Assembly: GCF_016432865.1 (NCBI RefSeq)
Contig: NC_067401.1
Location: 185,318,001-185,382,000, forward strand
Reading direction: 5' to 3'
Source: Antechinus flavipes
Taxonomy: Eukaryota
DNA length: 64,000 nt
Position 1 is the first letter of the stretch; each line of letters starts with the position of its first letter. The notes below the pieces were generated by a model, which was given only the letters and a program-made list of their open reading frames with translations, was not told where the DNA came from and did not search any database. Made by a program: the position numbers and the translations under genes. This document shows, piece by piece, positions 7,480 through 41,245 of this stretch.

Positions 7480-8420
7480 TGACATAAGCAGGCGCTTCGT
7501 CCTTCGACACGCCCTTGGAAGGGGTGAGGAAGAGTGGACCGATAGGTCCCTTCTGCGCAAGCGTAGCTCAGGGTGTCCTGCATGTGTGCGTGCATGCGTG
7601 TAGTATTAGGGGTTAGGGGTAGGGTTAAAGGTTTCAGCTCGGGTGCGCGCGCTAACTAGTCACGGTCACGCGCTCCTCGACGCCTGCGCTGTACTTTTTC
7701 TCAGGTCTCGGCGAGGGGCAGGCGGGTGCTGAGCGCGCCTGCGCAGTAGACAGCAGTGCCGGCGGCTGTGGCGGCAGGGGGAGGGAGGCGGAGGAGGCGG
7801 AGGCGGCGGCGGCGGTGGCGAAGGCGGCGAAGGCGGCTCAGCGAAGGCGCAGGCGAAGGCTTCCCGGGATTGAGGTAGTAGCTGAGGAGACGGCGGCGGC
7901 GGCGGCCATTTCCCTCACAGTGGCGGAGACCGAGGCGGCGGCGGACGGGGAGCGGCCCGGCCCCGGCCCCCTGCTCGTCGGTTGTGGCGGGGCCGGTGTG
8001 GGGCCTGCCCGGCTCCCGCCCCCTGCGGCGTCCCCGCCGGCTCCTCCTCCTCCCCCGGGGGGGCGGCGCAGGGGGCCCGGCCCGGCCCGAGCTCAGGCCG
8101 CTGCCGCTGTCGGAGGAGGAGGAGGAACAGGAGGAGGAGGAGGGTCAGGAGTAGCAGCGACAGCAGCCGCAGCAGCAGCAGCAGCAGCCGCAAGCGGCAG
8201 TGGCCCCTCCATGGGCGGCCTAGCTGCCGGGAGGGACATGGAACCGGGGCTGCCCGTCGAGGTGCGTGGCTCCAACGGGGCCTTCTACAAGGTGAGGCGG
8301 CGCTCCGGCCGGGAACACCTGTCCGTGCCTGCAGGCCGGGGAAGCAAGGGGCTGTCGGGACTCCTCCTTGCCCACTTCATAACCCGCCTCGAGGAGACAC
8401 TCCCCGGGCCTATCTCCTCG
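7480..8420 (+). promoter_or_regulatory. CpG island / promoter and GC-rich 5' leader of FXR2
   Basis: Dense CpG; NRF1-like GCGCCTGCGC at about 7735-7744; GGC, GGA and GCA triplet runs; no ATG between about 7745 and 8210. Confidence 0.85.
8112..8192 (+). repeat. Interrupted (GGA)n and (GCA)n triplet repeats in the FXR2 leader
   Basis: (GGA)5 8112-8126, ACA, (GGA)4 8130-8141; GCA GCC (GCA)6 GCC GCA 8163-8192. Confidence 0.9.
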
Positions 8421-11400
8421 ACCCCCCCCCCCCCTTCCCTAACCCCTCAGTGACTGCTCCTGATCTCTCGTCTGCTTCCCTCCTTCCCGGGGCAGAGACA
8501 GTCATTCCTCCTGCTCCCCAAAAGACCTCACCACAGGAACACCCTTCTTGTTCATTCCACAGCTGACCTTCCCTTCTGTGTTCACCAAAGGTTAAGACTT
8601 TAATTCTGTTTTTGGGTAACCCACCCCCTAAATCTGGGAGAGACCTCAGTCCATTATCTCAGGTAGAGCCCCTCCTACTTCGTATTTCCTAACTGAGGGA
8701 GAAAAAGGATGAAACCGAGCTCAAATAGCAGTAGCACCCCCTGACCTCTAGGAAGTCTATGCTCTGCCATTCATTTTGCTTTCTCATTCGTCGATGGCTT
8801 CATTATACAAGTCCTCTACCTCCATACTTCTACTTTCCACGCAAGACCTACCTAGACTATTCCTTGATCCGGGTAAGGACCAGTACATGTATGCATTATC
8901 GATGTCATGCCCCAAGCCGAGTTTATGTTTTTCTCAAGGGACCTCAAGTGAACCCCTTTCCCAAGAGTGAATACCCCTTTCTTTTGTTTTTCCCTAAGGT
9001 ATTTCTGTCTCTGGAATGTTCCCTAGTAACTTCCCTATTTGGGCATTCTCCTATAGCTCTTTTTTAGGGAGTCCCTTTGAAGAACCCTTTTTCTGTACCC
9101 AACCTCCTCTCTAAAGGCATTTCTGCAGAGATTCCCTCCTTTGTCCACACCCTTTTCTACCCACCTCTAATTTGGTTTCTGGGGTATCCTTTCATAGGTA
9201 AAATAATTGAAGTTGAAGATTCATTGCATCCCAATATTTTTCTTCTTAATTCTCTAATATGGGGGGGCTGGGACGGGCCATCCTTGTAACTTACATCCTG
9301 CCAACGTTTTTGTTCTACCTCCCAGGCCTGAGTTTGAACATATATTGTAGCCTATCCTACATCTGGAAGAACTAGAATGTAAGTTTCTTGAGGGTAGATT
9401 GTCATTTTTGTCTTTATCCAGTTCCTAGCAAATAGTTACTTAATAAATGTTTGTTAAAATTTCTCCTATATAGCCACATATGAGGTGAGAGCTTGCTCTC
9501 CCTTCCCTCTCCTCCTTTACCCAATAGACCCCCATACCTTTGAGATGTTCTGCTCCCTTTCTTTTCCAAAGCATATTTCACATTATAACTAAAAAGAATT
9601 TGGTGTTTGCTATGGGGTATACTCTTTTTTCTGTCATCTGATAGTTTTCTGGTAATCTGGGTTTCAGCTCACTCCTTAATCTAACTAATTAACTATATAA
9701 ACTTAGCTTAATCAACTTGAATGTTATTTTCAATCAAATTCTTTCTTAAGCAAAAAGAAGTACCTTAGTTGATTCTTTGTCATTTCTTTCATAAACCCAG
9801 GGTTCCTCCTTCAATTTTAGATTATATGATAATGCAGAGTCTTCAAAATGGCACCCCCGAATAAACTCTTGTTTCCTCTTGGACCCGTCCCATAGCAGCA
9901 TTTCTATTTGCCCTGGCAAAAATTCCTCCATTTCTAATTCTATGTGTCTTGGTAGCATATGCTTGTCTTCACTCTTTTTTTTCCCCTTACATTTCCCTCT
10001 TTTTTGAACTGTACTTCCAGATGCCTGCTTAATCTTGACTGTTCCTTTGCCCTCTTTTTTCTAAACTGCCAATCTTAGGAGAAAAAAGGATTTTGAGATT
10101 AGGTCACAGGTTTTATTGAACTATAAGATGTTCTATTTAGTCTTCTTTTATTCTTCTGTTTACTGGTATCTAGGGACAGTTTCTAGAGAAGATGGATCTT
10201 TAGGAAGAATCATCTAGATGAGAGAGGAGATTCCTTCCTTCCATCCCTACCCCCTACCCCTTGTCATATACACAGGTAGCTAAAACTTCTTTTAAAAACT
10301 TAGTTGCTCCTATATTGTATTAAATCTTTCTCTTAAGCAAATGTAAATGTGGTAAAGGTGAGAATTTGATTTAAAGTGAGGATGGACTTTGGAAGTGAGT
10401 ATTTGTTGGGAAATAGATCACATGGATTTCTGTATGCTGACATTTCTTATTTAAATCTTAAAATTTAATTTCTCCCATTTTGAAAAGACTAGAATACCTT
10501 AGAACAATCTATTTACATGCTAACTTTTTTTTTTTTTTTAAACCACAACCATTCTCTGCTGGACTCTCTATCCTTTTGTATTTGAATACTTTTTCTCTGT
10601 CTTTAGAAACTTTTCATGACTCAACAGATCGTGGTAGTTAGTAAGAAAGTAAAAAATGTTGTTTGAAAACAATATCCCCTGATATATAGGATCCTGATAA
10701 GGTTCCTCTCTTTCTCATGGATGTGGGAATCCTGTTGTAGATCCTCTTCTAAGAGAGACAGTGTCACCTCTTAATATCCCTCCAAAGAGCCTACATGTAT
10801 TTCTACTTCAATCTTTGGCTCTTTCAAATTCCATTGTCAGTCTACTTCTAAGATAGAAACATAGCTCCTAATCTTCACAGGTGCTTGGACCTGGTTGATT
10901 CTTCTCTTTAGGCAGGTTGGCCCTCTCCTGAGAGCTCCCCATAGCTCATCATATTGATGCTAGACTTAGTTCAGAAATTGATCAGCAGAGACCACTACAG
11001 CTCTGAACTCCCTAGCTCAAGAAATTCACCAATGTCTGTGCCCCTTGTAGTAAGGTTTTTTGTGCCACCATGCGCAGCCTCCTATTTTATTCTAAGGAAC
11101 CTCCTTCTAAACTCAACCTTTCAATTTCCAATTCTCTCACATGGAGCTTCCTGCCAAGATTATATTATTTGGGGAAAGTTCCATAATCAAAGTTAAATAG
11201 ACCTTAGTTGTGGTAATAAATTCAAAGAAGCTATCATGCCTACTTTGTTTTGGAAGGAAGGAGGAAGTAAGGTTTAATTAGAGTCTCCCCATCTGGACAA
11301 TGGAGAGAACCTCACGCCTGTTCCCGCTTTTCCCTCAATTTCTTTGACATTTCCCTTGCTTCACTGAATAAGGTAGGGTTATTTAGCAATGGCTTAGTCT

Positions 11401-14400
11401 TTTGGAAACAAAGTTAGTGAACCAAATGACCCTCTGGTCAGCTGAACTGGCTTCTCCTTGTCCTTGCCCTTTTTTCCCTCTGTTCATATTCTCTACCTGA
11501 TGCTAGGTGAGGCCTGAGGCATTCAAGTTCTTGGGGGAAGAAATAGTATTTAGGGGTGGAGTGAGTGATATTAAGCTGCAAGGGTCTGAATTCCTGAAAA
11601 GAATTAGAGTTTCAAATATTATGGTTAGAAAAACCTCACTGTAATTATGGATGGTATTTCTCCCTAATCTAAGTGGTCAAGGAATGATTGGTTTACATTA
11701 ATAAATAAGGATGGATAGCTTTTATGAATAACTTAAGAGCAGGGATCCATTTTTGAAAAGAGCAAACAAGTACCTGTCTTCTGCCATGCCCTCTTTCCCC
11801 ATTCTGAGGAATCTTGCTTAAAGAATTTTCCAGAACAGCTGACGTTGTCTTAATGAACAGAAGCTCAAAGATATTTTATATGTATAATAAGCCAAGGCAG
11901 GTGTGAAGTCCTAATGAGTTTACAGAGGTATTTTTTAGTTATAAAGGTTAGAATAGAAGAAGAGGTTATTGAAATAGAATGGTATGGAAGGAACATAAAA
12001 GAATGACAGTGGGCCATTTAGGAAAGGATTCTGGATTGGAAAAAGAAATTATGCAACTAGGGGAAAGGATGTAAGAAAGGGAAAGGAGATTTTGCATATT
12101 TACAATTTTTTCAGATTAGATTTTAGTTTATTATATAAATGTTAGATGCCATTGTTATTAAATATCATTTACTTTGAGAATTAGTAAAGTTCTAGAGAAA
12201 AATTGGGAACCACATTACTTATCCTAAAAGGAAATAGAAGGTGATTTTGCACTAATTAAACTTTAGATTCTCAGTATAAAGAGAACTAATAGTATAATAG
12301 AAAAATCCAAAATGGTGTTGATAGTTATGGTGGGGGAATAGGCAGAGAAAAGTGTTTATTCTTTAGGATGATTTCTACCCTTATCCCATCTGCCCCCCAA
12401 GCCCAGTTCCTTTTTAAGGAAGAGAGGAGAGAAATAAACATAGATTAAATGCCTACTACATGCCAAACACTTTGCTTTAATAATAGCAACTAACATTTAT
12501 ATCTTTATGTGCTAGGCATGCTTTACACATGTTGGCTCATTTCATCTTCACAACCACTCTAGGAAGTAGATACTATTATCCCCCTTTTTAAAGTTGAAAC
12601 TAAAGCATATGAAGCCAAGTAACTTAACTCAGGTTTACACGGCTAATAAATGTCTGAAGCTGGATTGGAACTCGGATCTTTCCAGGCCCATTGGTCTATT
12701 TTGTACTACCTAGATGCAATAAAATTTTTAGAGTACATTCATTATATGAAGATGGGAAAAGTGGAAACAGATAGTTGGACAGATGATTATAGTCACCTCA
12801 GTTTAGAGCATTATCTCTATCTACTCTTATTTGGGTAGGGATACTTTATTAAGTTAGAAATAGTTCTTTGCTAGAACATTCATCACTTTCCTTTTGTTAT
12901 CTTATTTTTATACCCAAGTGCCCCACTTCTCTAAATCCTTATCCTTTCCCCTTATAGTGTCCTGTCTTCTCCCATCCCCGTTTCTTCTTAAGACCAAGGC
13001 ATCTACTCCCCAAGGGCAATATGGGAATGACAGGTTTCCTCAAATCTGTTCTGCATGAAGAGGAGGCAGACCTTTGTCTCCTCTCTGTTCCAGGACATCG
13101 TCTTGTCTTTGAGGATAATTCTTAGTTTTAGTTAATGCTTTTTGGTATTTTAATTGGATTGTAGCAGGCTATTGAGCAGAAAATTGAAGAATTGAGGGGG
13201 GTTGGGGTTTCTGGGATCCAGAAGGAAGTCCACTACAGCTCTGAAATTCCCTATGGAAAGAGGTTCACCAACCTCAGGTTACCAAATTATTCCATTCTCC
13301 TCCCCCAATCCCTACCCTTTTTTCTTGTTCTAGTGGTTTGCCTTTTTCCAAGTGTCTCCCCATCCCTTAAAAAACAGACACACTTTTCTTAGAATATGAA
13401 TGTGTGTCTCTTACCCCTCTCCTGACTCACCTCACCCAGATTGCTTCTGTCCCCCAGAACTCAGGTTTCCTGCTTCCAGCCTGCCCCTTATTCCCTTCTG
13501 GAGTTCTGAGCTGATGGTAAATCTCCATTTTCTTTCTCACCTTACTCCGCTACCCACTGTAGGGTTTTGTGAAGGATGTCCATGAAGACTCAGTTACAAT
13601 CTTCTTTGAGAACAAGTAAGACCTGGGGAAAGAAAATCCAGGATGTCTAGTTTTCAGAGAGGGTTCCAGGGGGTGGAAGCTAACAGAGGAGAACTGATCC
13701 TAAAAGGATTGCTTTGGGGAGGAGAGCAAAGAGTTAGGTATGTAGTCCCAGGAAAGGAGCAAGGATTACAACTAGAGGGTGGAGGGGTGGGATAATGGAT
13801 AAAAGAAATATTGGGTTCCATTTGAAAGAGCCAGGGATTATGGAGTAGGAATTGAGATAAAATCTTCTAATTCTGAAGGAATGGAAAGCAGGGGGAATTG
13901 CTCTGGGAGTATTCCCATTTGGGGAACTTTCATCAGTATTAGGCTCTTCACACACTGTCCCATTTACAGCTGGCAGAGTGAGAGACAGATCCCCTTTGGG
14001 GATGTTCGACTACCACCACCCACTGACTACAGCAAGGAGATCACAGAAGGGGATGAGGTAGAGGTAAGAGCACTAAAGTTACTTAAAGTAAGATACAGAT
14101 AACTTTCTTTTCTCTCCTCCCCTGTCAGCTTACCTCTACTCTACCCCACCCCACTTTACTGTCTTTTACTTGTCTCTTTGTCCCAGTTATCATTCATCTA
14201 AGAGCCTGGATACCCCTTTATGTGTTAGATTTGTTCAAAGTGTTCTCCTTCTCCTTCACCATTGTTAGTTAAGTGAAGAATGATAAGGAGAGTGTCTGTC
14301 TTGACTGAAAATATCTGCAAAAGAAGGAACCCCCAGGTGGTTTTAATTTCCTATCTTAAGCTCTCCTGCTGCCTAAGGTCTTGTGAATTTCCTGCTGTAG

Positions 14401-17400
14401 TTTCCCTGTTGTTCTGATATTTCACATTTTATGACAGAGTTCTTTTTCAGTTAAAAATTCCATAGATAATAGAGAAGTTTCATGGCTTCTTATCCATTCT
14501 GATTAGCAGCTGTCATCTCTGCTTTCTTTTACTCTTGGTTTAGAGGGGTTCTACTTTTTTTGTGGTTACTGGGCAATTTCCAAGACCACCTCTATTTTCT
14601 TCTCTAATTTCCTCTAGGTTTATTCCCGAGCCAATGAACAGGAGCCTTGTGGTTGGTGGCTGGCAAGGGTTCGAATGATGAAGGGAGATGTGAGTGATCT
14701 TGGAGGGTTTGGGAGTGGCTCAGGTAGTATTGGAACTGAGGGTACAAAGTTAGGAGGAAGCAGCGTTTGAGGATGATTGTGGGGATTTGATTCCACATGT
14801 TCTAAGGTTGCTCTCTTATTTCATCCCATCAGTTCTATGTCATAGAATATGCAGCTTGTGATGCCACCTACAATGAGATTGTGACTCTGGAACGGCTCCG
14901 ACCTGTCAATCCCAGTCCTCTGGCTACCAAAGGCAGTTTTTTCAAGGTTACCATGGCGGTTCCTGAGGATCTGAGAGAAGCGTGAGTGTCAAGGCTCTCC
15001 ACAGAGGTGGTATCCCTTATTCATGACTCTTCCCATGGCCACCTCACTCCTTACCTTCCTTTTTTCCAGCCTCCCCTTTTCTTTCCCTATTCCTACCCCA
15101 TTTTCTACTTTATATCCCCATCCATTTTCTCCTATTAGTTAAAATAATTTTCCTGGTTACTCCCTTTCTGTCCCCCTGAACTATCTGAAAGTTTCTCACT
15201 TCTCCCTAGCTGCTCCAATGAGAATGTCCATAAAGAATTCAAGAAGGCTTTAGGAGCCAACTGTATCTTCCTAAACATCACTAACAGTGAGCTCTTTATT
15301 CTGGTAAGCATGTTTACCCATGCCTTTAGTTTTCCTCTCCTTTGTACCTCTGATTCTTAGCAGAGAAAGAGGGACCTAAGGGAATTTTTTAATATTTTTA
15401 ATCAAAGGACAGAATATTCTACTTGCTTGCTCTTGATCATGATTTTTTTTCTTGGGAATGAGGGTTCTTACCCACCAGAGTCCAAAATAGCATAGGACAA
15501 AGGGTAGGTTTTCAGCACCTGACAATTCCCTTGAATCTCCAAGTGTAATTTAAAAATGTAGCCTTCATTCTTTTTTCTAAGACTACCCTGTTCCCATCCA
15601 ATTAATTAAACATTTGTTGAATGCTTTCTTTGTGCCAAATGCTAGGACCACAAATGAAGTCCCTGTTTGTGTAAGCACAAAGCTTATACTTTAATGATCC
15701 AAGTCTTAGAAAACGATTCCCTTCTGTGCCTTGAAATTACATCTTATTTTCCCCATTTGTCCTTCTATTCCTCTATTTCTTTTAGATACCCAGATAGCTT
15801 CATAAACTCCCATCTTCCCTGAGGACCCAAGTATCCTAGTGCCCAACTCTTATCTTCACTTCTATGTGGAATGGGGAGGGAGGGGGGAGAATAGTTAACT
15901 TCTCTTCCCACTTAGTCAACAACAGAAGCTCCTATAAAACGGGCATCCTTGCTGGGTGACATGCATTTCCGAAGCCTCCGAACCAAACTGCTGCTCATGT
16001 CCAGAAATGAAGAGGCCACCAAGCATTTAGAGGTGAGTTCTGATCTTGTTTCCCCCTATTGGAAGGTCCCTCCCCCTCTTAGAACACTTAGTTCAGCTCC
16101 TGTTGAACCAGTTCACTTGAACATGGGTTCACTTGATTTAATTCAGTTATATCCCATCAATTCATGTCATAAAAAATGTTGGGATCCTTTAGGATACCTA
16201 CATTGTAGTCCTTGTTGTTTCATTTGCCTTCTTTTTAATAGTTACCCCATATATTTATTTGGCCCATTGTTGTTTATGCTTTCATATACATATACATTTT
16301 ATTTTCACAGTGACAAGTATTTGATTGGCGATATTATCTTTTTTTTTTTTTTTTGAGAAAGTTTAGGCCCAGAGAAATTGTGACTTGTCCAAAGTATTCA
16401 GTTCATTTTACATTTTGTAAATGAGGTTAAATTGTTAACTTTCTGGAAAAGAGTAGCATCTTTAGTCTCATTTTTTCCTTTTCACTATTATATACTCATT
16501 CTTCTTAAGCTTTTTGTCCTGGTTTTTTTAAATACATGGCTCTTCCTGTTCTATATCCACTTTCTCTGTTAACTTCAGTAGGTTGCTCTAGAGAAACTCT
16601 TAACATACGTGTATTATTTGAGCATCCTGTAATTTGGGTTTGGAGTAGAGATCATCTTTTTATAAGAATTTCTGATTTCTGGATTCAATTTTAGCTTCAC
16701 ATCTTAGTAAATCCCTGTAGGGGACTTAAGGACTGGATGCCTTGCATATCCAAGACTTTCCCTTCTCTAGCATTTTCTTTTCCTTTAGGCCTATTTGCAA
16801 TGCTTTTTGATAAAGTTTCAGCTCCTTTCCTATAGGAAATGAGCTTTTTTGGAACCTACTGTTGAAGCTATCTTTTCCTACCTTTCTTTTTTTCCTAACT
16901 ATGGTTTATTCCCACAGACTCCTTGCTGTCTTCTTCAAGAATTAGGCAGCCTGTCTTTGACTTCTTCTCAGGCTCTAATTAGGAGTTGAACAACTTCTTT
17001 TTATCTTGAGATTCCCTTTAATCCTTCCTCGGTTGTTTGGAGTTTGTTGTAAGGAAAAGACTGTAGTGTTTGAAAAAGTGTAAAGTGACATTTGAATGGT
17101 ATTTTATGCTTTTGCTTATTTCAAAGGGCTATCTATCATATATCTTTGTGATATGAGCTTTATAAGAATTTTCCTCTGAGATAGGTAGGGCAGCAATCAT
17201 TTCATAAATGTAATTTGAAGTTGAGATATTGTGGTTTGTCCAAAGTAACAAAGCTTAGCAGTATCAGAAATCAGAAAACTTTTTTACCACTTGATTACTA
17301 GATTACCATGAATTTCTAAGCTTTGGCAAGGAAATGTGTCACAAGAGTGAGTGGCCACTAGAAGTTATTGTTTTATTCTTTTTAACTCATTCTTTTCCAT

Positions 17401-20400
17401 GGTCCCTGGTGGTCTTAATCACATAGAGAGAGGAACCTTTGGTCATGTACTGTCCTGAGCTTTAGAAAGGTCCTAGCTGACTTCGTCTTTTCTTCCAGAC
17501 AAGCAAGCAGCTAGCAGCAGCATTCCAGGAAGAATTCACAGTACGTGAGGACCTAATGGGACTAGCAATTGGGACTCATGGTGCCAATATCCAACAGGCC
17601 CGAAAAGTGCCTGGGGTGACAGCCATTGAACTGGGCGAGGAAACTTGCACCTTTCGAATCTATGGGGAGGTCAGTACTGGGAGTCCTGAGGGGTGAAATA
17701 GAAAATATACTGGAATTCGTCCTCCTTTTTTTGGATTTAGTATTAGCACATTTCCTTTAAAACAGGGTGGTGGAAGGAAAGAAAGCTTAAATTTTGAGGG
17801 CTTAGGCCCTGGTGTCCAGTAATTATCTTTCCTCTCTTTCTTTAGACACCTGAGGCATGCCGGCAGGCCCGAAGCTACCTTGAATTCTCTGAAGACTCTG
17901 TCCAAGTGCCCCGGAATCTGGTTGGTGAGTCTATATAGCCAGTGATCAGGATGAAGCAGGAGAAAGGAGGAATTAAAAGTGTAGAGTTGAGAACCAGTGG
18001 GAGAAGAGGTAGAGAATGGGAGATGTGGAGGATGTTAAACAACTGGATATCTAAGAAGGAACTTAGTAGGCTTCTGCTGGATTGAGGACTGGACAAGCAG
18101 AGACTGTAACAGGAATGATAGAAGAATTCCAAGGATATCGGGTGGTTTTCATCTTGAATGAAATAAACCTCTTACAAAGTAAAGAACTGTCTATTATCTT
18201 CTTCATCCTTTAACAGGCAAAGTAATTGGGAAGAATGGGAAAGTGATCCAGGAGATTGTAGATAAATCTGGTGTGGTGAGAGTTCGAGTGGAAGGTGATA
18301 ATGACAAGAAGAATCCCAGGGAGGAGGTATTACTGAAAAATAGTTCTTTGGTTTTCCTGGGGAAGATGGGTAGGAGCAAGGTCTTAAGGACAAGAACTTT
18401 TGTATGGCAGGGGCAAGGATAAGTTTTGCTGAAGATAGGTCCCCAATATGTAAACTTATGTGAAGATGAGGGAAACAGGTTTGCTCACGTTTGCTTTCTC
18501 CTTATTGATCCATTTCTTCCTGTCAGGGAATGGTTCCTTTCATATTTGTTGGCACCCGGGAAAATATCAGCAATGCGCAGGCTCTCCTGGAATATCACCT
18601 CTCTTACTTGCAGGTATTAGGATTATCTCCATGGGAGGGAAAGAGATCCTGAGTGTCTTGAAGAGAATTGAAACTTTTAGGAAAGCTGGGATCTATGAAA
18701 ACTGTCTCTGAAGAGAACAGGGCTAATGGGCAGAACTGGTTACCTGATTTGTTCACATTTAGGATCTGTCCTTTAGGTTTTTTAATTTTTTGCTAAATTA
18801 TTATTTAGAGAGGTTTGGTGGTATGCAGTTTCAGCAGAGGACTCTTATTAAATTTTTCTCCTTTCTCTGGCTCCAAATAATTTTTTCCCACTTTCCCAAT
18901 CAGGAGGTAGAACAGCTTCGTTTAGAAAGGCTACAGATTGATGAACAGCTTCGGCAGATTGGGCTGGGCTTCCGTACCCCTGGAAGTGGCCGAGGGAGCA
19001 GTGGTGGTGACAAAACTGGCTATGCTACGGATGAAAGTTCTTCCTCTTCCCTCCATGCTACTAGAACTTATGGGGGTCGTGGCCGTGGCCGTAGGACAGG
19101 AAGTTCTGGCTATGGTGAGATTGTGATGTATGGCTAAAGAGGGAGGAGACAAGTTAGGTAGTGGAAGGAGAATAAATTGTATGCAAAGGCTTTTTCTGTG
19201 GGACTACATATTTTTTGGTAGGGAGAAACCGAATTGACTTCTGTTCCCTAGGCCCTGGTTCAGACCTGTCTACTGCTTCTGAAACGGAATCTGAGAAACG
19301 AGAAGAGCCTGATAGACCCGGACATAGTGACCAAGATGCCTCTAGCCGAGCTGAAGAAGGTCGTAGAAGACCAATGGGGGGTCGAGGTCGAGGGTCCAAT
19401 CCTACACCTCGGCTTCCCACAAAGTACAGCACATCTTCCATTAGCTCAGGTACTGAGGGAACAACCTAATATTCATCTGAGTCTTGGAAGGAAATGGGAT
19501 AGGAACTGATAATGGAGAGCCAAATACCAAACCCTCTTCTAACTTCCTAGTCCTGAAGGATCCTGACAGTAACCCCTACAGCCTGCTGGACACATCAGAA
19601 CCAGAACCCCCAGTTGACTCTGAACCTGGAGAGCCACCTCCTGCTAGTGCCCGGCGCCGAAGATCTCGCCGTCGCCGCACAGATGATGATAGGACCATAA
19701 TAGATGGAGGACTGGAGTCTGATGGGCCTAACCTGGCTGAAAATGGTCTAGGTGAGCAGGATTTTCTGGGTCACTAAAATAAATGGGACTTGGGAACCTG
19801 GGTGCCTCCATTTTCTGAATATCTTTATCACTACTCTTCCCTACAGAAGAGGAATCAAAACCCCAACGACGTAACCGAAGCCGTAGAAGGCGAAACCGTG
19901 GTAACCGGGCAGATGGCTCTATCAGTAGAGACCGGCAACCAGGTGAATAGCCAAGATTTCTTCCTTAGACTTGAGAGTGGGACTTGAGTTGTGATGATAA
20001 AGGATTTAGGTAGAATTAGAAGGCTGGGGGATAGACATTAGATCCCTTCTTCTCACAGTGACAGTGGCAGATTACATTTCCCGGGCAGAATCTCAAAGCC
20101 GGCAGAGGCAGCCCCCTGAACCCACTCATGTTCCTTCCGAGGATTCCCTCTCAGGACCAAAGGTAGATGTATTGGTGCTTTCTTCTTCCTCCTGTCCTAA
20201 ACCCCCAATTCCCATCCCACCTTGCCCCAAGCTTTGTCTTTACTGTTGCATTGGGGAAGAGAAGCCCTGGTTTTTTTTTTTTCCTGATAGATGGGGTGGA
20301 GGGGTAGGGTGGTAAAGCAGAAGTGTGAGTTCACAGGGCTTGCCTCTTTGGGAGTTGGTAAAGTAAAAAAGGAAAGGACTCTCATCACTTTTTTTCTCTT

Positions 20401-20503
20401 CCTTCCCCTCCAGGGTGTCGGCAAGCTTCCTAAAGGCCCCTCTGAAAATGGGGAGCTCTCTGCCTCCTTGGAGCTGGGCAGCTTGGTGAATGGAGTCTCA
20501 TAA
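8211..20503 (+). CDS. FXR2: FMR1 autosomal homolog 2 (Agenet/Tudor x2, KH x2, RG-rich C-terminus), 668 aa
   Basis: Exons 8211-8291, 13563-13615, 13970-14063, 14618-14689, 14833-14981, 15210-15303, 15916-16032, 17499-17669, 17846-17924, 18217-18326, 18527-18613, 18904-19114, 19252-19449, 19551-19751, 19847-19942, 20059-20162, 20414-20503. All GT-AG, total 2007 nt, in frame. [27 protein letters not shown]...[18 protein letters not shown]...[10 protein letters not shown] matches FXR2. AATAAA at 21083-21088. Confidence 0.97.
12440..12720. mobile_element. Ancient L2/MIR fragments in FXR2 intron 1
   Basis: TTAAATGCCTACTACATGCCA (L2 3' end) followed by MIR-like TACTATTATCCCC...GAAACTAAAGCA...AACTTAACTCAGGTTTACAC...GGATTGGAACTC. 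Confidence 0.6.
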
Positions 20504-22609
20504 AAGTCCCTCCACTCTTCCCTGTATCTCTCCCCTCCCATCTTGCTTGCTACCCAACAAGCCCTTCCTGACCCGCATTGGAGCTGCTCTTGTCTAAGGG
20601 GGGAGGGAACAGTGGCCACACTGTGGGTTTTCCCCACCCCCCAGGGGCTTGGGGGTGGGTGGGATGGTGTGCTTGTTACAGGGTCACCCTCCCCTCTTTG
20701 TCCTCTGTCTACCCACCCTATGGTGAGGGGAGCCTCCCCCCCATCAGACTGGATGTGCCTTTTATCCTTTAATGCCCCAATCTCTCCTTGGCCCCCTAAT
20801 TCTCTCCCTGGCCTGTTTGTGGGGAGGGTCGTCTTGTACCCACCCAAATGTGATGGTTTGGAGGATTCCCTTGGCACCCCTTCTCATCCTGTCCCCCCCT
20901 CTCTGGGCCTCATCACTGTGGAGGATGGGGGTGGTGTCATTGGGTGGGAGGCATGGGATGGGGGGGTTTGAAGCAGGGGTAGGGGCCTACTAAGGTCTCT
21001 GGGGGTGGGAAGTAGGGGGGCAGACTTTGTCTGGCTAATGAGAAGGTGTATTTATTTTTCACTGTACAGTATTTAAAAAGAGAATAAAAAAATCCAAATG
21101 GCTCCCTTCTTTCCTCCCAGTCTTGTTTCTCACATGCAGCCACATTGTTCCCTTAATTATTTCCCCTTGTCCATGTTGCACCCAACTCAGCCTTATCACC
21201 ATTTGGGCAACTATCTCTAGAGCACCTTAACTCTGGAATTGATGCCTTTTCTTTTCACCCTTCCCTAAGTCAGCACGGAGCTACCCAAGTGTCCCCACCC
21301 AACGTTACTGCTTACTTACTTTGCCTTAGCCTACTGTGACTCAGGGATGCCCCTCCCTAGCAGTTGAGATTTGGGGTTAAAGTTTAATCAGCTTAGTTTG
21401 TCTTGGAGTCCCCTAGGCCCAGAATTGGGCCCTGAAGATTGCACGCAAAGTGAGGTGTTTTCCCGATGGTGCACCTGATCACATTTTTTCTCCGAAGCTT
21501 TAGACTCCAATAATGGTTCTGCTGCTCCAGTGGCCAAATTTCCTCTTCCCCAGCTCCCCTGCAGTTTGAGAATGTTTGAGAATGCAGTTTGAGAAAGGAT
21601 CAGAAATGTAAGGTGTAAGGTTAAGGATAATCCTCAGCACCAGAAAAAGTCACAGCTTGAACACCTGCCAGGATGACTCGGGAAGAGAAATTACCTTAAA
21701 ATTTCCCCTCCAAAACTTCCCCAGACAGTCTGGGTCGGAGAATCCTGAAACGAGCCAAGCTGAGGAAGCAAGCTTGACTTGTACTCCTTTTCTAGAGCTT
21801 AATTTCACTTGCTATTTCTGCTTTAAGGGAGTTCTAGACCTAAAATTACTTTGAGGACAAATTCCAGGGGTGCTGGGAAGGTGAGTCTTCTGGAATAGAT
21901 CTAAGGTTAGGAAGAGAAGCTCAGAGGACAAAGAAATGGGGGTCTGGAAAACAGTAAACCTGCGCTGAGAGGCGGGGAAAACGGAGGTGGAGGGTGGGAT
22001 CAGGCTTTAAAAAAACTTACCGGGTTTGACCAGCCTACTCCTGTCACTTGCGGCCCCCCCCCCCACCTCCCCATCCCCTTTCCGTCCCCTACTCCCCCAC
22101 CCCCCCAAGGTGATAGGAGTGAGTAAGTAGGTATTCTCGGAAATAAGCAGATACCGAGAAGACCAATGACTGCAGGAAGCCAGTTGCTCTAGAGCCCGTG
22201 AAGCGTACCTTCATACCTTTTCGAATTACGTCTTGAAAGGTTGGGAGGGGTGGAGACCCTGGACTTGGGGGAGATTCCGAAGAAAAGCTGTGGAGGGAGA
22301 GAACCCAGCTACCTGCCAGTACCCAACACTAGCTCTCGACTCTGCAAGATTTTAAATCCTGCTGAGTGGCCATACATAATTAAGGACGACGAATCTGGGG
22401 ACAAGGTAGCACAGATTCTTTTTCTATTTTCGTTTGGGGAGGTGGAGAAGGGTATTGGAGCCCTCCTTGAGGATTGAAAGATTATTTAGGATTCTCATAT
22501 CAGATTTGGGATAATCTGACCTTTCTAGACACCAGATCCAAGAGCATTTCCGAGGCTCCTTCCTATCTGCCCCTCCTCTCGAGCTAAAAGGCTTCATGGC
22601 CCTGCACCC

Positions 22610-24181
22610 ATGGCTTTCGCGTCTTCCACTTCCCGTCCCTTGGAGCCCGAGAGTCCAGGGATTCCCGGGGATATTCCCACGAAGGTGAAGCGGCCCATGA
22701 ACGCATTCATGGTGTGGTGCTCAGGCTAGTGTCGCCAGATGGCGCAGCTTCACCTCAAGATGCACAACCCGGAAATCTCCAAGAGCTTGGGCACACAATC
22801 GAAACTGCTGCGGGAGGCGGAGTAGCGGCTCCGCGCGCTGCACTTGGCGCGACTATCCCGACTATAAGTACTAGCCGCGCCGCAATACCAAGAACATCAA
22901 ACCGAGCCATGGAGGGCTGAAACTACCCAGGGCAAACGGGAGCAGCGGTGGAGGACTAGGGACTTCGGCTTAGCCCCATTACCCTACTTCTTATCTGATA
23001 GAAGACTGCGGGTGAGTGATGACCAGGGATGGAGGTAGAGGAAGAAGGACGAGAGACTTCTATACTTTCCTAGAGGACCACTGTGCCTTGGGAGAGGGTC
23101 GAGATAAAGGTTGGGGAAGGATAATTGAGCGCACGTTCCCAAAATTCGATCTAAGTTGGGCGGTAAGAGAGCTGTCAGCCACAGAAATCAGCAGCAGTGG
23201 ACCATCTAAATAGGAAGGCTCAGGGCTTCCATCCAAGCTCCCGGGTTAATGGCAAAATCGGTGACGACCTAGAACCTGGGTTGGGAGTGAATTAGCGAGG
23301 ATCTAAAGAGAGGAGCAGGATTCGAGGACACAGTGCCTCATCGCAGAGCTCAACTAGTGCGGTCAGTCACCTTTGTGTCTCTGCCAAATTAATATCCTTA
23401 TATCCTAAGTACCGATTCTGGGTAGTTGTGTAGCAAAGGCCCTATCTTCTGTCTGGGTTGCATCCAGAATGAGACTAGGAAACAAGCTTTTCTCCTCACT
23501 GTTTTCAAACCCCATCAACTTTCACATTGTCAAGAGTCCTGTCCTTTAGCTACCCCAACTCCCTCTCTCATCCCCTTGTGCAGAGTTTGCAAACCTTTCT
23601 CCAGGTCCTTTCTGGGAAAGAAAAACAACTGGGGAACATACATGCCAAATGATGTTGCTATGCCACAAAAGGACAAAAGGAGTCTAAGCCACTAGATGTC
23701 CCTGTCCCATTGATAGAACAAGCAGGGTCTGGATATCCAGGCTACAGACTGAGCCAGAAATAACCTGCTGCTCCTCCTCTTTGTTTGTCCCAAACAGGTC
23801 TAACTAGAAAGCTGAGGAATGTGACTCAGGAAATCTACCTTCACACACTCTCTCTTAGACAGGGAATGACAGAGAACTCTGGGTTTGAGAGAGCAGTCAG
23901 GCATCAGGAATCTAGGGACCTCAGGAGATTATGGATGTCAAATTAGAGACATGGGATTGAGGGGGAGAGAAACCCAGGTTCTTCTCACATTTCCCCTTTT
24001 CTTTCCTCACAGAATTCATCACTGTAAGCCGAAAGCCCCCTCCCTCTGTTCCCTTCCTCTTGGAGCTTCACTCCAAGGGGAGCTCTTGAATCCATACAAC
24101 CCTTATTCCCTTGGCCCCACCTGTTACTATCCTCCTCTCTTGGGTCCCACCCCTAATCCATTAAAACACTTTAGGATCTAG
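22610..24181 (+). pseudogene. SOX15: SOX15 unitary pseudogene (disrupted HMG box), 2 exons
   Basis: Exon 1 22610-23011 reads MAF...[53 protein letters not shown](+1)RDYPDYKY*PRR. Stops at 22727, 22823 and 22872; extra G at 22847; 24-bp deletion of PFVEEAKR. Donor GTGAGT at 23012. Exon 2 24013-24181 (IHHCKPKAPSLCSLP...LQGELL...YYPPLLG) resembles the SOX15 C-terminus. Syntenic position between FXR2 and MPDU1. Confidence 0.9.
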
Positions 24182-25276: not shown

Positions 25277-28200
25277 CTATTGATGCTTCTTTTCCCATTT
25301 GTGAGGAATCCTGACATTCCAGTAATAAAGGAGCTGGAAAGCAATGAGACCATTGCAGATGGAGGACACAATAAAAGTCACAGCCATGAGGGGGTCACCT
25401 GTTTCCTGAGGATAAAATAGAAACAAAAAATTACAACAGAGTTGGAAAGTGAGCAGAAAGTCCAATCCATTTAGGAGACCTGAAGCCAGGGAGATTTAAA
25501 TGATTTGCCAAGGCCAAAGAGGTAGTAAGTTTTAGAGGCAGTGGAATCTTAATCCCCATTCTGAAAGAGCCTAAATAATCTAATTTTCAGGAATAAATTG
25601 ACATTTCACCAGTAGGGCCTCTAAGAAGGTAGAGAGTTCTTGGAGGGGATCCTCACCTGGAGAGAAGTGAAGATTCGGGCAAGAGAGCCAGCAAAGAGTA
25701 AGAAAACGGTGATTGCTGACAGGTGACCTGTGTGGCCATTTTTGTAGTTGGTGATCACTTGGAGCAACTAAAGAAAATCAAAAAACCTTTGTGCTCATCC
25801 ATTTCCTGTCCTTTCCCCATCATTTAGTGATCCTTCACCTCTACCCCCATTCCTACCCTTTGCCCATTTCCTTACCCCTCCCCTATTTTGTCCCTCTCCA
25901 TCCCTACTCCAAAAACCCTCTTTCCCCTCCTCCACACTCACCCTCCCCATGATCACAGCGGGCATATTGGTGGCCTGAAGCAGGGTGACCACAGCCTTAG
26001 GCATCAGAGGTGAGAGTAATACCAACAGGATCAGGACATAAATGCCTAGTAAGGCCATACCTGGAGTAGTGCCAGGGAAAGATTAACTGACAATTCATTT
26101 TCACATCTTCCAGTTTGCCTACTTTCCCTGCTTTGTTCCCACGGAAAGCCTCAACCCTTCTTCCATTATGGTGCCCTAAAATCTTTCATGCCCCATCCAT
26201 GCAGGATTGTAGGGAACCCAGCCCAGAGCTTCCCCTATTTCTCCCTTATTTGGGGGGGAGGGGGAGGGTACCTCTCATGGTATGTCCTCTGTAGTGTAGG
26301 ATCAGGAAACAGATGGTAATGGTCTGTAGCATTAAGAACAAGGCCTCACCCCAAGAGCTGAAGGGAATCCAAGACATGGGTCAGAGCTGGACCCAATTCT
26401 CCTAATCCTATGGTCTTCCTGAGGTCTACATCTCCCAAGGGTTATCCTTTATCAAAGGAAGTGCCCATCTGAGGTTCAAGAGAGTTACCTAACATCATTA
26501 TCTCTCTGGGAAGTTGGCAGCCAGAAACTTAAGGCTGTCCTTCCCATAGCTTCTGACCCCTGACTGATCTAATTTCCTCAGTTCCCAGAGCTTTGAATAC
26601 ATAATAGTCTCATTAACTGTTTGCTTTTAAGGGGGAAAAGGGGAGAGAAAGGGAGAAAGATGGGTAGAGAACATTCTAGTTCTTCACACTCCTGAGGAAG
26701 TAGTTATTACATTCCCAAAGCCATTTAGGCCCCTCGGTCACCTGAATGGGAAGCTGTTGGCCACACTATAGACGATGGTCCCTGTCAAGGCCACCAGTTC
26801 TAGAAGAACTGCCTGGAGGCTCAGTCCTTCTGTGCTCTTCACTCTCAGAATTTTAAATACCTGAGGTAGTTTCACTGTGAGAGGGCAAACAGAAAATAAA
26901 AAAAGTCATAGCCTGTGAATATAGATTCCACTCCCTTCCCAGCTATATTTGCTTTTTGAGGAAAAAAGGGGCCAAATTCACTTGGTGATCAGGGAGGCCA
27001 TCTCTGATTCCCAATGGATACTCACCTAGCAATGAGCCAGCAACAATGCCAAATCCCAGGCCTTTGCTGATTAGTATCTTGAGACAGGGAACTGGAAGGG
27101 AGTGAGAAAAAGAAAAGAGAGAGATGTTAATAAAGACAAAGCCAAGGTAGAAACTACACCAACCCTCATGTCCCAAAGCCTTCTCTGAAGGCAGAGGCCT
27201 GTGCCTGCCTTCCAATGCCAAGAAACCAAAAGGTATAGGAAGAGAGAAGATTGTAGAGTGTCCACACCCCATCTTTCCCCATACCCTGTCTACTTTTAGC
27301 CCAGCCTTGGGGACACTACCTCTCTCTACTGCTCTTCTTTGAGAACTACCTGGGAAGATAGCCTCATAGAGTCTAAGGCCTTAGGGAAAAATGGGACACC
27401 CTACCCTCCCTGCACCATTCTCCTACCTTGGCTAATGTCCCAGTTCTTCCTGCACAACACTGTCAGACTCAGGAAAACTTCAGGATTTGAAATTAAGAGA
27501 TCTGGATCTTCTAATTGTTACCTCTGTGACCTTGGACAAATAAGTTAAAATCTCTGAGTCTATTTCCTCATCTGTTTGATGAGGGGACTAGAGAGAAGAT
27601 CTCAAAAACCTCTTAGAACTCTAAATCTTATGTTACTCCTCTCTAGTTCAGTTTTCTTACTTTCTACAAGTATATAATACTTGTACAAACCAACCCACTT
27701 CGCTGATGCTGTGAGAAAAATACTTCAAAAACCTTAAAACCCTGTGTGACCCACTATTATTATCCTGATGCACCTGCCCTGAAACCTTCAATGGTGCTCT
27801 CTCCCTATCAGTCATTCAAAAGTAATCTCTACTGTTACCCTTGGCCAAGCCTCAGTGCTGACTTTTCCCCACTACTGATGAGCTTTTGATTTTACTCTTA
27901 CTCTTACTCAGAACACTCTGCCCAAACCCTTCCAAACTCACTTATTGATTATTCCATCTTGATCCTCGTTCTGTCTGAGTGTTAAGCCTCTTCTCTTTCT
28001 ATGGTCTCTCACTTAGTGGATTTATTTATTAGCCACAATGTGTTTCTCTATGAAGATGACTATCACAATGATCTTTATATCTGGCCCAAATCTTTCTCCT
28101 GAACTCCAGTAACAAATTATTGCCTGTTACACATTTCAAAATAGATATTCCACAGACACTTCAAACTTAAAATGTTCAAAACAGAATTCATTATCTTTTC

Positions 28201-30415
28201 CCCAGAAGGCCCATCTGTCTTCCTTACTCAGGGAATACTTCTGGTCACGTGGATTGACAAAGCTGCTGCTACTAACAATAATAGTTAGCTTACCACTTTA
28301 AGGTTTGCAAAGTGCTTTACAAATTGTTATCTATTTTGTTCCTTACAACAATTTAGTGAGTCAGGTGTTATTTTGTAGACAAAAAAAGAGGTACAGAGAG
28401 AGTAAATAACTTGCCTGGGGTCGCACAATTCAAGTCTGAGGCTGGTTTTGAATTGAGGTCTTCCTGTTGAATCCAATAACCTATTTACTCTGCCACCTTG
28501 CTGACTTGGTGTTAATCTTAATTTTTCACATTCCCTCACTCCCTATACAATTAATTGTCAAATTTTGTCTCTAGTACTTTAACAACATTTTTCATTCTAT
28601 TTCCTGGTGACTCAAGAAGCAACCACTCTATATGAATGTTATGGAATATTATTGTTCTGTAAGAAATGACCAGCAGGATGAATACAGAGAGGCTTGGAGA
28701 GACTTACATGAACTGATGCTAAGTGAAATGAGCAGAACCAGGAGATCACTTTACACTTCCACATCGATATTGTATGAGGATGTATTCTGATGGAAGTGGA
28801 TTTCTTTGACAAAGACTCAATTTCAATTGATAAAGAATGGACAGAAGCAGCTACACCCAAAGAAAGAACACTGGGAAACGAATGTGAACTATTTGCATTT
28901 TTGTTTTTCTTTTCGAGTTGTTTTTTACCTTCTGAATCCAATTCTCCCTATGCAACAAGAGAACTGCTCTGTTCTGCACACATATATTGTACCTAGGATA
29001 TACTGCAACATATTTAACATGTAAAGGACTGTTTGCCATCTAGGGGAGGGGGTGGAGGGAGGGAGGGGAAAAATCGGAACAGAAGCGAGTGCAAGGGATA
29101 ATGTTGTAAAAAAAAAAAAAAATTACCCTGGTATGGATTCTGTCAATATAAAGTTATTATAAAATAAAATAAAATATTAAAAAAAAAAAAGAAGAAGAAG
29201 AAGCCACCACTCCAGTTCAAGTACTTAGCACTTGGTCCTTTTCTCCTGAGTTTCTTTTCTTTCAAATTCATTCTCTACCAAAGCAATTTCTGATCATGTC
29301 TATTCAATAATTTTGAGCGGTTGCTTAAATTAACTTTAGGATCAAACAAAAATTCTTCTGTTTCGGCTTCTCAACCTGAGCCCAATTTATCTTTCCAACT
29401 TGATTATGTATTACTCCTATTCATATAGTCAATGGTCCAGCAAACCACGCTTCTTATTGTTCTTATTCTTTAAATAAATGATATCTCCAACTTTTTCACA
29501 AGTTTTTCCTGGAATTTGGAGTATTCATCTACCTCCCCGATGAGCTCCAAAAGGAGCCCTGATACTGTACAACTTAAGTGGTCCTTGCCCCACTATTAGC
29601 ACATTACCTTACCCAGGGGAGGAGGATAACTTATGGGCTTGTTTTATAACATCATACGTAACAACAATGTGGAAGACAATCTGCTTTAAATGATCAGAGT
29701 TCTGGACTTGAGACAAAATACATGCATACTTATACCCATATATCTAAGTAAATCTCTCTACACGTTGACAAATAAGGATACATAGATATATCTCGCCATT
29801 TATTATGGAGACCTAGGTTCAAATCTTAACTTTTCCGTGTGACCTTGGGCAAATCACTTTACTTCTCCAACCTCACGGTCTTTATTACAAATAGATACAT
29901 TCAAACCTCTGCAAAATATATCACTCAGCCACGTGGTGTAAAATAAATAAACTAATGAATGGAAGGTGTGTTAAAATATCAGCTCTACAGTCATTATTAG
30001 GGGAGACTTAATCTTAGCAATTTCGGTATCAACTTATTAACCAGAAAATTTAATTAAAAGACAGCAGTGGCTCTTACTGGAGACTTCATTAACCACGCCC
30101 CCGCCCACGGCCCCTATAAAAGGAACCCGGCTTCCCTTCCCACGTGGGATTGAAGGCACTTCCTCCCTGCCCACATGGCCACCCTAAGTCACTACCATTC
30201 GAAAGGTCATGACAGTAGCTGCCATAATCTCGTGGTTTGATACGATACCCCATTCTAAGCCCACCTCACATCCCGGTATTCGGAGGACCACATGATCCTA
30301 GAGAGAGCTCACCATCGAGCAAATCCAAGTGAATAAAAAACCGATCGTAACATTTCTCGGGCAGAAGAAAAGGCACCAGAAGCTGCTTTAAAGGACCTTC
30401 CGCTTCCTCCGCCAT
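25277..30415 (-). CDS. MPDU1: Mannose-P-dolichol utilization defect 1 (PQ-loop membrane protein), 248 aa
   Basis: Exons (-) 30415-30313, 27091-27026, 26874-26742, 26357-26272, 26060-25942, 25767-25657, 25405-25277; 747 nt. [24 protein letters not shown]...[10 protein letters not shown]...[15 protein letters not shown] matches MPDU1. Confidence 0.96.
28629..29197 (+). mobile_element. 5'-truncated young LINE-1 in MPDU1 intron 1, with TSD
   Basis: Reverse-complement homolog of the 2752-3361 copy; A-rich tail; 15-bp TSD AAGAAGC(A/C)ACCACTC at 28614-28628 and 29198-29212 with one mismatch. Confidence 0.9.
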
Positions 30416-34288: not shown

Positions 34289-34289
34289 G

Positions 34290-35551: not shown

Positions 35552-41245
<5,694 letters not shown>

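What the first reader, a model, noticed from the sequence alone, without database searches (positions are those of the whole stretch)
22610..23011. SOX15 is dead in this lineage: HMG box broken by several independent lesions
Seen in sequence: in-frame TAG at 22727, TAG at 22823, a +1 insertion at 22847, TAG at 22872, and further frame disruption before the donor. Radical changes include the conserved Trp to Ser (TGG>TCG, 22799), Ser to Pro in HNS and Pro to Leu in the NPK position. Established: SOX15 is the only SoxG factor, acting in eutherian trophoblast, muscle regeneration and germ-cell/pluripotency programmes. Inference: several different substitution-type lesions argue against a single assembly error. 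All neighbouring genes are intact, so this looks like lineage-specific loss of a developmental transcription factor in a marsupial. I cannot say whether it is already reported.
Basis: partly seen in the sequence, partly recalled or inferred. Interest (0 to 1): 0.8.

Follow-up and report, generated by a model that had tools for sequence, protein, structure and literature searches.

The report
Dead SOX15 gene in antechinus
The developmental transcription-factor gene SOX15 is a thoroughly broken relic in the yellow-footed antechinus. This loss was already published for its relative the Tasmanian devil, and two breaks shared with the devil and a dunnart suggest one loss before these carnivorous marsupials diverged.

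Summary
Every stop, the +1 insertion and all three radical substitutions sit at the stated coordinates. The remnant lies in the orthologous slot between FXR2 and MPDU1 and keeps its intron. It matches intact marsupial SOX15 proteins at E 2e-39 (exon 1) and 5e-18 (exon 2).

- The ancestral ATG is at 22596, followed by a 43-nt frameshifting deletion; the ATG at 22610 is new to this lineage.
- There are a 24-nt and a 22-nt deletion.
- There are a 2-nt deletion and a further TAG at 22971.

The window is Antechinus flavipes, 100% identical to GCA_016432865.2 CM028220.1.

SOX15 pseudogenisation in marsupials is published for opossum, Tasmanian devil and Leadbeater's possum (Ogita et al. 2021, PMC8244163). 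Antechinus and dunnart were not in that study.

My alignment shows the Trp>Ser change and the 2-nt frameshift are shared by antechinus, devil and fat-tailed dunnart. All other lesions are private to one species. Substitutions on the three terminal branches fit neutrality (47 nonsynonymous to 17 synonymous; expected fraction 0.70).

The most likely history is one loss on the dasyurid stem. This is a new member of a known kind, of low to moderate interest. The exon-1 CpG island has not decayed, which is unexplained. The scan held no earlier SOX15 note.

The parts
22596..23011 (+). SOX15 exon 1 remnant, from the ancestral ATG to the GT donor at 23012
   Evidence: Aligns to koala L005:3001-3506 and Dromiciops L006:3001-3506. 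tblastn E 2e-39.
22596..22600 (+). Ancestral start codon followed by the junction of a 43-nt frameshifting deletion (Antechinus only)
   Evidence: Reading from 22596 ends at TGA 22686.
22610..22612 (+). Lineage-specific ATG replacing the Thr codon of PAPT-AFASS.
   Evidence: koala has ACC, devil ACT, Antechinus ATG.
22682..22886 (+). HMG-box remnant (KVKRPMNAF ... DYPDYKY*PRRN)
22727..22729 (+). CAG>TAG stop (Antechinus only)
22799..22801 (+). TGG>TCG, the conserved Trp of AQWK changed to Ser. Shared by Antechinus, devil and dunnart.
22821..22825 (+). Junction of a 24-nt deletion (removes RPFVEEAK) and TAG 22823 (Antechinus only)
22846..22847 (+). One extra G, a +1 frameshift (Antechinus only)
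22872..22874 (+). CAG>TAG stop after DYPDYKY (Antechinus only)
22939..22940 (+). Junction of a 22-nt deletion (Antechinus; the devil has a 2-nt gap starting at the same column)
22970..22973 (+). 2-nt deletion (GGCTACCAG > GGCT--TAG) shared by all three dasyurids, next to a TAG
23012..24012 (+). Retained intron, GT...AG
24013..24181 (+). Exon 2 remnant: 55 open codons and TAG at 24179. It is out of frame with any reading of exon 1.
   Evidence: tblastn E 5e-18 to 5e-20.
22500..23250 (.). CpG island that persists over the dead exon 1
   Evidence: CpG o/e is 0.72-0.75 here against 0.0-0.25 in most flanking windows. Ancestral CpGs are retained about as well as other dinucleotides.
7815..20100 (+). 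FXR2, the upstream syntenic neighbour (approximate span)
   Evidence: Pfam hits: FXMRP1_C_core 9e-26, FXR_C1 2e-31, and a sub-threshold Tudor_FRX1 match on exon 1 (22.8 bits against 25.9, E 8.7e-05).
25277..30415 (-). MPDU1, the downstream syntenic neighbour, 248-aa product
   Evidence: Gene called on identical DNA at L003:13874-19012, mapped to the window by the 100% match.

Best explanation

Shown:
- Exon 1 carries four stops in the ancestral-phase frames. It has five indels: -43, -24, +1, -22 and -2 nt.
- It has replacements of core HMG-box residues, so no DNA-binding SOX15 protein can be made from any start codon.

Inferred history:
- The gene was still under purifying selection for much of the dasyurid stem branch.
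- It was then disabled before the split of Sminthopsinae (dunnart) from Dasyurinae (devil and antechinus). The disabling changes would be a 2-nt frameshift that cuts off the exon-2-encoded C-terminal domain and/or a Trp>Ser change in the HMG core.
- After that, each lineage accumulated its own stops and indels at the neutral rate.
- The loss was probably tolerated because SOX15 is the least constrained of the SoxB1/G ohnologues in amniotes. Its eutherian roles may be later acquisitions or may be covered by other SOX factors. This last point follows Ogita et al. and was not tested here.
For: Identity and orthology:
- tblastn hits occur only at this locus.
- The FXR2-SOX15-MPDU1-CD68-EIF4A1-SENP3 order matches other marsupials.
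- The intron is retained.

Species:
- The window matches L003 (GCA_016432865.2 CM028220.1) at 100.000% over 13,654 nt.
- Devil CD68 is only 93% identical.

Lesions.

Shared lesions:
- TGG>TCG and the 2-nt deletion have identical sequence in Antechinus, in two devil assemblies and in the dunnart.
- Koala and Dromiciops DNA have TGG and no deletion.
- Tammar, brushtail possum, Gracilinanus and echidna proteins keep AQWK. All keep the YQP motif, within GFGYQP or a variant of it.

Neutral drift since the crown:
- The pooled terminal branches have 47 nonsynonymous (stops included) to 17 synonymous changes. That is a fraction of 0.73 against a spectrum-matched neutral expectation of 0.70 (p 0.59).
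- Within the HMG box the counts are 20:10, against 2:10 between koala and Dromiciops (Fisher p 0.0055).
- The stem branch has 10:12, below the neutral expectation (p 0.036).
- Antechinus-devil identity in exon 1 without gaps is 88.5%. That is close to the flanks, where BLAST identity (gap columns counted) is 88-92% in the long blocks downstream and 85% upstream.

No intact copy: no dasyurid SOX-15 protein was found.

Precedent: PMC8244163.
Against: - Only one Antechinus assembly was available and no reads, so the seven Antechinus-private lesions are not independently verified. A look-up for an exact ORF in read assemblies found nothing.
- Pairwise NG86 dN/dS among dasyurids is 0.47-0.72 for the whole gene and 0.28-0.36 for the HMG box, not 1. 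Stop codons had to be dropped and GC-rich third positions inflate dS. Some residual constraint after the crown split therefore cannot be excluded on these small counts.
- The two shared changes need not have been the inactivating ones. A truncated HMG-only protein could have persisted for a while.
- The exon-1 CpG island has not decayed. That is unexpected for a long-silent locus.
Confidence: 0.9

Rival explanations
1. SOX15 died independently in each dasyurid lineage. On this view the shared Trp>Ser and 2-nt deletion were tolerated, giving a C-terminally altered but working protein in the common ancestor. Antechinus, devil and dunnart then each lost the gene separately afterwards.
For: - Every outright stop and every HMG-box indel is private to one species.
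- Pairwise dN/dS in the HMG box among dasyurids is about 0.3 rather than 1.
- Ogita et al. found repeated independent losses in marsupials and an intact thylacine HMG box.
Against: - With only the 2-nt deletion, exon 1 has 504 nt. Exon 2 would then be read as AAT TCA TCA CTG TAA, which removes the whole exon-2 domain (sequence).
- The Trp is invariant in all intact SOX15 proteins and in SOX2.
- Branch-specific counts fit neutrality on all three terminal branches.
Confidence: 0.15
2. The Antechinus-private lesions are assembly or consensus errors, and the real gene is less damaged or even intact.
For: There is a single assembly, and no read-level check was possible.
Against: - There are eight or more lesions of different kinds, including four deletions of 22-43 nt and three C>T or A>T stops.
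- Two lesions recur identically in two other species and in two independent devil assemblies.
- NCBI called no protein-coding gene here.
- The substitution pattern is neutral.
Confidence: 0.02
3. The coding sequence is dead, but the locus is still used as a promoter, a CpG-island regulatory element or a non-coding transcript.
For: - CpG o/e is 0.72-0.75 over exon 1 against 0.0-0.25 in most flanking windows.
- Ancestral CpGs are retained at 68-78%, against 77-80% for other dinucleotides, in three lineages.
- Only 2 of 20 private substitutions are CpG transitions.
Against: - There are no expression or methylation data.
- In the devil, about 430 nt just upstream of exon 1 do not align and the donor site is GC.
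- There is no Rfam family in 20000-26000.
- Sequence identity in the remnant equals the neutral flanks.
Confidence: 0.25

Closest known systems
Sox15 pseudogene of the Tasmanian devil (Ogita et al. 2021, BMC Ecol Evol 21:134, PMC8244163; GCF_902635505.1 chr4:289670298-289672062)
   Same: It is the same gene in the same syntenic slot between Fxr2 and Mpdu1, and in the same family (Dasyuridae). It shares the Trp>Ser change and the 2-nt frameshift downstream of the HMG box.
   Different: It is a different species, and all stops and HMG-box indels differ. The devil has one TAG at the Gln before the Trp, no HMG-box indel, a mutated donor and a ~630-nt intron deletion. Antechinus has three or four TAGs and indels of -43, -24, +1 and -22 nt.
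Sox15 pseudogenes of the grey short-tailed opossum (Yamada et al. 2008, Zoolog Sci 25:313, cited in PMC8244163) and of Leadbeater's possum (Ogita et al. 2021)
   Same: They are unitary pseudogenes of the same gene in marsupials, with in-frame stops and frameshifts in the HMG box.
   Different: According to the paper they are independent events in other orders (Didelphimorphia, Diprotodontia). I could not fetch their DNA.
Intact marsupial SOX15 (koala XP_020822144, wombat XP_027713051, Dromiciops XP_043819670, brushtail possum XP_036621839, tammar XP_072497296)
   Same: They have two exons, the same neighbours, and the same N-terminal, HMG and C-terminal motifs. Nucleotide identity to the Antechinus remnant is 81-83% in exon 1.
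   Different: These have open 216-228-codon frames. The koala-Dromiciops HMG box has dN/dS 0.05. The Antechinus copy is broken throughout exon 1.

Membership tests
SOX15 / SoxG orthologue | Position between FXR2 and MPDU1, on the same strand as FXR2 | tested here: met
   FXR2 Pfam hits lie upstream. MPDU1, CD68, EIF4A1 and SENP3 lie downstream on identical DNA. The order is the same in koala, Dromiciops, brushtail possum and tammar.
SOX15 / SoxG orthologue | Two-exon structure, with one intron after the HMG-box exon and a SoxG-type C-terminal exon | tested here: met
   GT at 23012 and AG at 24011-24012. Exon 2 is 78-85% identical in protein to marsupial SOX15. Exon 2 alone retrieved only SOX15-type proteins from 1.84 billion representatives.
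SOX15 / SoxG orthologue | Best sequence similarity is to SOX15 rather than to other SOX groups | tested here: met
   Identity to koala SOX15 is 68% over residues 3-106, including the non-HMG N-terminus.
Functional SOX HMG-box protein | Uninterrupted HMG box of about 75-79 residues reaching the Pfam HMG_box gathering score | tested here: not met
   The box has three stops, a 24-nt deletion and a +1 insertion. The pieces score 17.6 and 12.8 bits against a cut-off of 25.4.
Unitary pseudogene | Disabling lesions in the only copy, at the ancestral locus, with no intact paralogue | tested here: met
   Lesions are shown. There is no second hit in the window. No dasyurid SOX-15 protein is in the protein collection. 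A whole-genome tblastn was not possible.
Unitary pseudogene | Neutral substitution pattern | tested here: met
   The nonsynonymous fraction is 0.73 against a neutral 0.70 (p 0.59). The HMG box differs from the functional comparison (Fisher p 0.0055). Pairwise NG86 values below 1 leave some uncertainty.
Processed (retrotransposed) pseudogene | Intronless copy away from the parental locus | tested here: not met
   The intron is retained and the position is syntenic.

The most novel reading that the evidence does not exclude
SOX15 was lost once on the stem of Dasyuridae, after the thylacine lineage split off. All living dasyurids, about 70 species by my own recollection, would then lack the only SoxG factor. 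On this reading the dead gene's CpG island has been kept unmethylated for tens of millions of years because the locus retains a non-coding promoter or regulatory role.
Probability: 0.2. Interest if true: 0.45.

Novelty: new member of a known kind. Interest (0 to 1): 0.25.

Why it matters
SOX15 is the single SoxG factor. In eutherians it acts in trophoblast giant cells, muscle regeneration and germ-cell and pluripotency programmes. Its repeated loss in marsupials is already the subject of a paper.

This window adds a further species, and the comparison adds the dunnart. The shared lesions move the devil's event back to at least the common ancestor of living dasyurids, turning a species observation into a family-wide one.

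This is useful for people who use the dunnart and antechinus as laboratory and de-extinction models. SOX15-dependent circuitry from mouse or human cannot be assumed there. The finding does not change the general picture.

Tried and rejected
- Pfam on the shifted-frame piece and on the exon-2 ORF gave nothing.
- Two first calls failed on coordinates or length and were corrected.
- The supplement of PMC8244163 holds genome coordinates but not the HMG alignments, so I could not compare the published devil lesions letter by letter or read the thylacine sequence.
Bilby CD68 isoform X2 is not on record. The bilby, Petaurus and thylacine states are therefore untested.
- An exact-ORF look-up meant to find independent read assemblies of the Antechinus remnant found nothing.
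- I first thought CpG decay might explain the 75.7% BLAST identity between Antechinus and devil exon 1. I rejected this: identity without gaps is 88.5% and CpGs are not depleted. The low figure comes from indels.
- Pairwise NG86 dN/dS proved a poor measure here, because stop codons must be dropped and third positions are heterogeneous. I replaced it with branch-specific counts set against a spectrum-matched expectation.
- Rfam found nothing in 20000-26000.
- Notes from the scan hold no earlier SOX15 entry.

Full report
**What is at the coordinates**

- TAG at 22727.
- TAG at 22823.
- TCG at 22799, where SOX proteins have the Trp of (A/E)WK.
- CCG at 22769 (Ser>Pro in HNSE).
- CTC at 22754 (Pro>Leu).
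- An extra G at 22846/22847 that moves DYPDYKY into the next frame.
- TAG at 22872 in that frame.

The window has no N.

The two longest open pieces align to SOX2 HMG boxes in PDB (E 0.0014 and 1.4e-5). They no longer reach Pfam's HMG_box cut-off (17.6 and 12.8 bits against 25.4).

Exon 2 was found from the ORF list and the sequence. The acceptor AG is at 24011-24012, followed by 55 open codons and TAG at 24179.

**Orthology**

- Upstream ORFs give FXMRP1_C_core (9e-26) and FXR_C1 (2e-31), so this is FXR2.
- Downstream on the other strand lie MPDU1, CD68, EIF4A1 and SENP3.
- This is the order seen around annotated SOX15 in brushtail possum, koala, Dromiciops and tammar.
- Exon 2 alone, searched against 1.84 billion representatives, retrieved only two SOX15-type proteins.
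- A word search with one of them listed SOX-15 of tammar, koala (cluster includes wombat), Dromiciops, brushtail possum and Gracilinanus. It listed none from any dasyurid.
- tblastn of four intact marsupial SOX15 proteins against the whole window hits only 22544-23012 (E 2e-39 to 4e-33) and 24011-24160 (about 1e-18 to 5e-20).

The remnant is therefore the orthologous, intron-containing SOX15. It is not a processed or duplicated copy.

**Which genome**

- The mucin-like exon of CD68 (open frame 33675-34289, minus strand) found Tasmanian devil macrosialin at 93% identity.
- Its 90% cluster also holds Antechinus flavipes and Sminthopsis crassicaudata.
- Fetching the three loci and comparing them showed that L003 is 100.000% identical to window 22347-36000 over 13,654 nt. 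L003 is A. flavipes, GCA_016432865.2, CM028220.1:185340347-185362288.
- The devil is about 89.5% identical and the dunnart about 86.8%.
- The window is CM028220.1:185318001-185382000, and the remnant is at 185340596-185342181.
- Earlier scan notes had called this genome a dasyurid close to the dunnart and the devil. That is now pinned to species.

**Anatomy of the decay**

I aligned exon 1 of Antechinus, devil, dunnart, koala and Dromiciops (junctions). The two devil assemblies are identical here.

Antechinus-private lesions:
- A 43-nt deletion right after the ancestral ATG at 22596. Translation from that ATG stops at TGA 22686. The ATG at 22610 replaces a Thr codon and is not the ancestral start.
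- CAG>TAG at 22727.
- A 24-nt deletion (22821/22822) removing RPFVEEAK, with TAG at 22823.
- A +1 G at 22846.
- CAG>TAG at 22872.
- A 22-nt deletion (22939/22940).

Devil-private lesions:
- Deletions of 18 nt and 2 nt near the N-terminus.
- CAG>TAG at the Gln before the Trp.
- Deletions of 8 nt and 2 nt.
- A +1 insertion and a GT>GC change at the donor.
- A ~630-nt intron deletion.

Dunnart-private lesions:
- Loss of the ATG region.
- A +3 insertion.
- ATG>GGG in RPMNAF.
- A 2-nt deletion in LHPK.
- TCG>TAG.
- Further 1-nt and 2-nt deletions.
- Deletions of 1 nt and 10 nt within exon-2 coding sequence, and a 12-nt gap just downstream of it.

Lesions shared by all three dasyurids, with identical sequence:
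- TGG>TCG at the HMG-box Trp (window 22799).
- A 2-nt deletion, GGCTACCAG > GGCT--TAG (window 22970/22971).

Koala and Dromiciops DNA show the intact state at both sites. Tammar, brushtail possum, Gracilinanus and echidna proteins keep AQWK and the YQP motif (within GFGYQP or a variant of it), so they show it too.

With only the 2-nt deletion, exon 1 would be 504 nt. Exon 2 would then be read AAT TCA TCA CTG TAA, which deletes the whole exon-2 domain (sequence).

**Selection**

I assigned substitutions to branches by parsimony, using sites where koala and Dromiciops agree.

| Branch or comparison | Nonsynonymous (stops included) | Synonymous | Test |
|---|---|---|---|
| Antechinus terminal | 18 | 5 | – |
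| Devil terminal | 10 | 7 | – |
| Dunnart terminal | 19 | 5 | – |
| Terminal branches pooled | 47 | 17 | fraction 0.73; neutral expectation 0.70; binomial p 0.59 |
| HMG box, terminal branches pooled | 20 | 10 | neutral expectation 0.69 |
| HMG box, koala vs Dromiciops | 2 | 10 | Fisher p 0.0055 against the row above |
| Dasyurid stem | 10 | 12 | neutral expectation 0.68; p 0.036 |

The neutral expectation was obtained by re-placing the same base changes at random.

The only nonsynonymous HMG-box change on the stem is the Trp>Ser. Identity between Antechinus and devil in exon 1, ignoring gaps, is 88.5%. BLAST identity in the flanks (gap columns counted) is 88-92% in the long blocks downstream and 85% upstream.

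Pairwise NG86 dN/dS among dasyurids is below 1 (0.47-0.72 whole gene, about 0.3 in the HMG box). I attribute this to having to drop the stop codons and to fast third positions. It does leave room for some constraint early in the crown.

My reading:
- The gene was functional for much of the stem branch.
- It was disabled shortly before the dasyurid radiation.
- It has drifted since.

Two or three shared lesions against six to ten private ones per lineage fit that order of events. This last point is inference.

**What is known**

Ogita et al. 2021 (PMC8244163) searched eight marsupial genomes.
- They report Sox15 pseudogenes in opossum (first shown by Yamada et al. 2008), Tasmanian devil and Leadbeater's possum.
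- They report intact HMG boxes in thylacine, brushtail possum, koala and wombat.
- They conclude there were independent pseudogenisations under relaxed selection.

Antechinus and dunnart were not included, and their marsupial comparison (Fig. 2a) covered only the 225-nt HMG box. In the searchable library no paper links SOX15 with dunnart. The one paper that links it with Antechinus only cites Ogita in passing.

The phenomenon, and even the loss in this family, is therefore published. The new points are the Antechinus and dunnart copies and the evidence for a single event older than the dasyurid crown. The scan's own notes held nothing on SOX15.

**Unexplained**

The dead exon 1 is still a CpG island.
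- CpG o/e is 0.72-0.75 at 22500-23250, against 0.0-0.25 in most flanking windows.
- Ancestral CpGs are retained at 68-78% in the three species, against 77-80% for other dinucleotides.
- Only 2 of 20 Antechinus-private substitutions are CpG transitions.

A long-methylated relic should have lost most CpGs. The island has presumably stayed unmethylated in the germ line, whether through residual promoter activity or some other cause. No expression or methylation data were available. Rfam finds nothing there.

**Limits**

- There was no read-level check of the Antechinus-private lesions.
- I had no thylacine, numbat, bilby or Petaurus DNA.
- FXR2 was not verified exon by exon.
- Dasyurid phylogeny and dates come from my own knowledge, not from a tool.

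**Verdict**

However, this is a further example of a published, recurrent loss. Interest is low to moderate.

Noticed in passing
window 22500-23250: The CpG island over the dead exon 1 has not decayed. CpG o/e is 0.72-0.75 against 0.0-0.25 in most flanking windows, and ancestral CpGs are kept about as well as other dinucleotides in antechinus, devil and dunnart. This suggests the island stayed unmethylated in the germ line.
   Followed up: partly
Petaurus breviceps GCA_028583685.1 (no DNA served); Macrotis lagotis: At the SOX15 slot of the sugar glider a 243-aa product with no Pfam HMG hit is called. No SOX-15 protein from the sugar glider or the bilby is among the best relatives, although their CD68 is annotated. 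Both are candidates for further SOX15 losses. The sugar glider would fit the published loss in Leadbeater's possum.
   Followed up: no
P0008 (Gracilinanus agilis XP_044531162.1): The annotated SOX-15 of this small opossum keeps an HMG box but has R>G, R>C and R>H changes. Its C-terminus is unrelated to exon 2 of other marsupials. This may be early decay in a second didelphid.
   Followed up: no
L001/L002:19985-20308 (-), Tasmanian devil: Both devil assemblies carry a called 106/107-aa product over SOX15 exon 1, and its DNA contains an internal TAG. The gene model reads through a stop.
   Followed up: partly
window 22108-22536 and 23098-23731: About 430 nt just upstream of exon 1 and about 630 nt of the intron have no counterpart in the devil, but they align in the dunnart. 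These are devil-specific deletions around the relic.
   Followed up: partly
window 24155-24181; L005:4715-4760: The end of the SOX15 frame differs among marsupials. Koala and Dromiciops stop at TGA right after GPTP. Tammar reads on (DPPLIP). Dasyurids lack two bases there and read on to NPLKHFRI.
   Followed up: no
window 7815-8453: An earlier scan note (s1-209045) proposes a GUG-initiated N-terminal extension of FXR2 here. I only saw that the ORF's 3' part matches the FXR Tudor domain.
   Followed up: no
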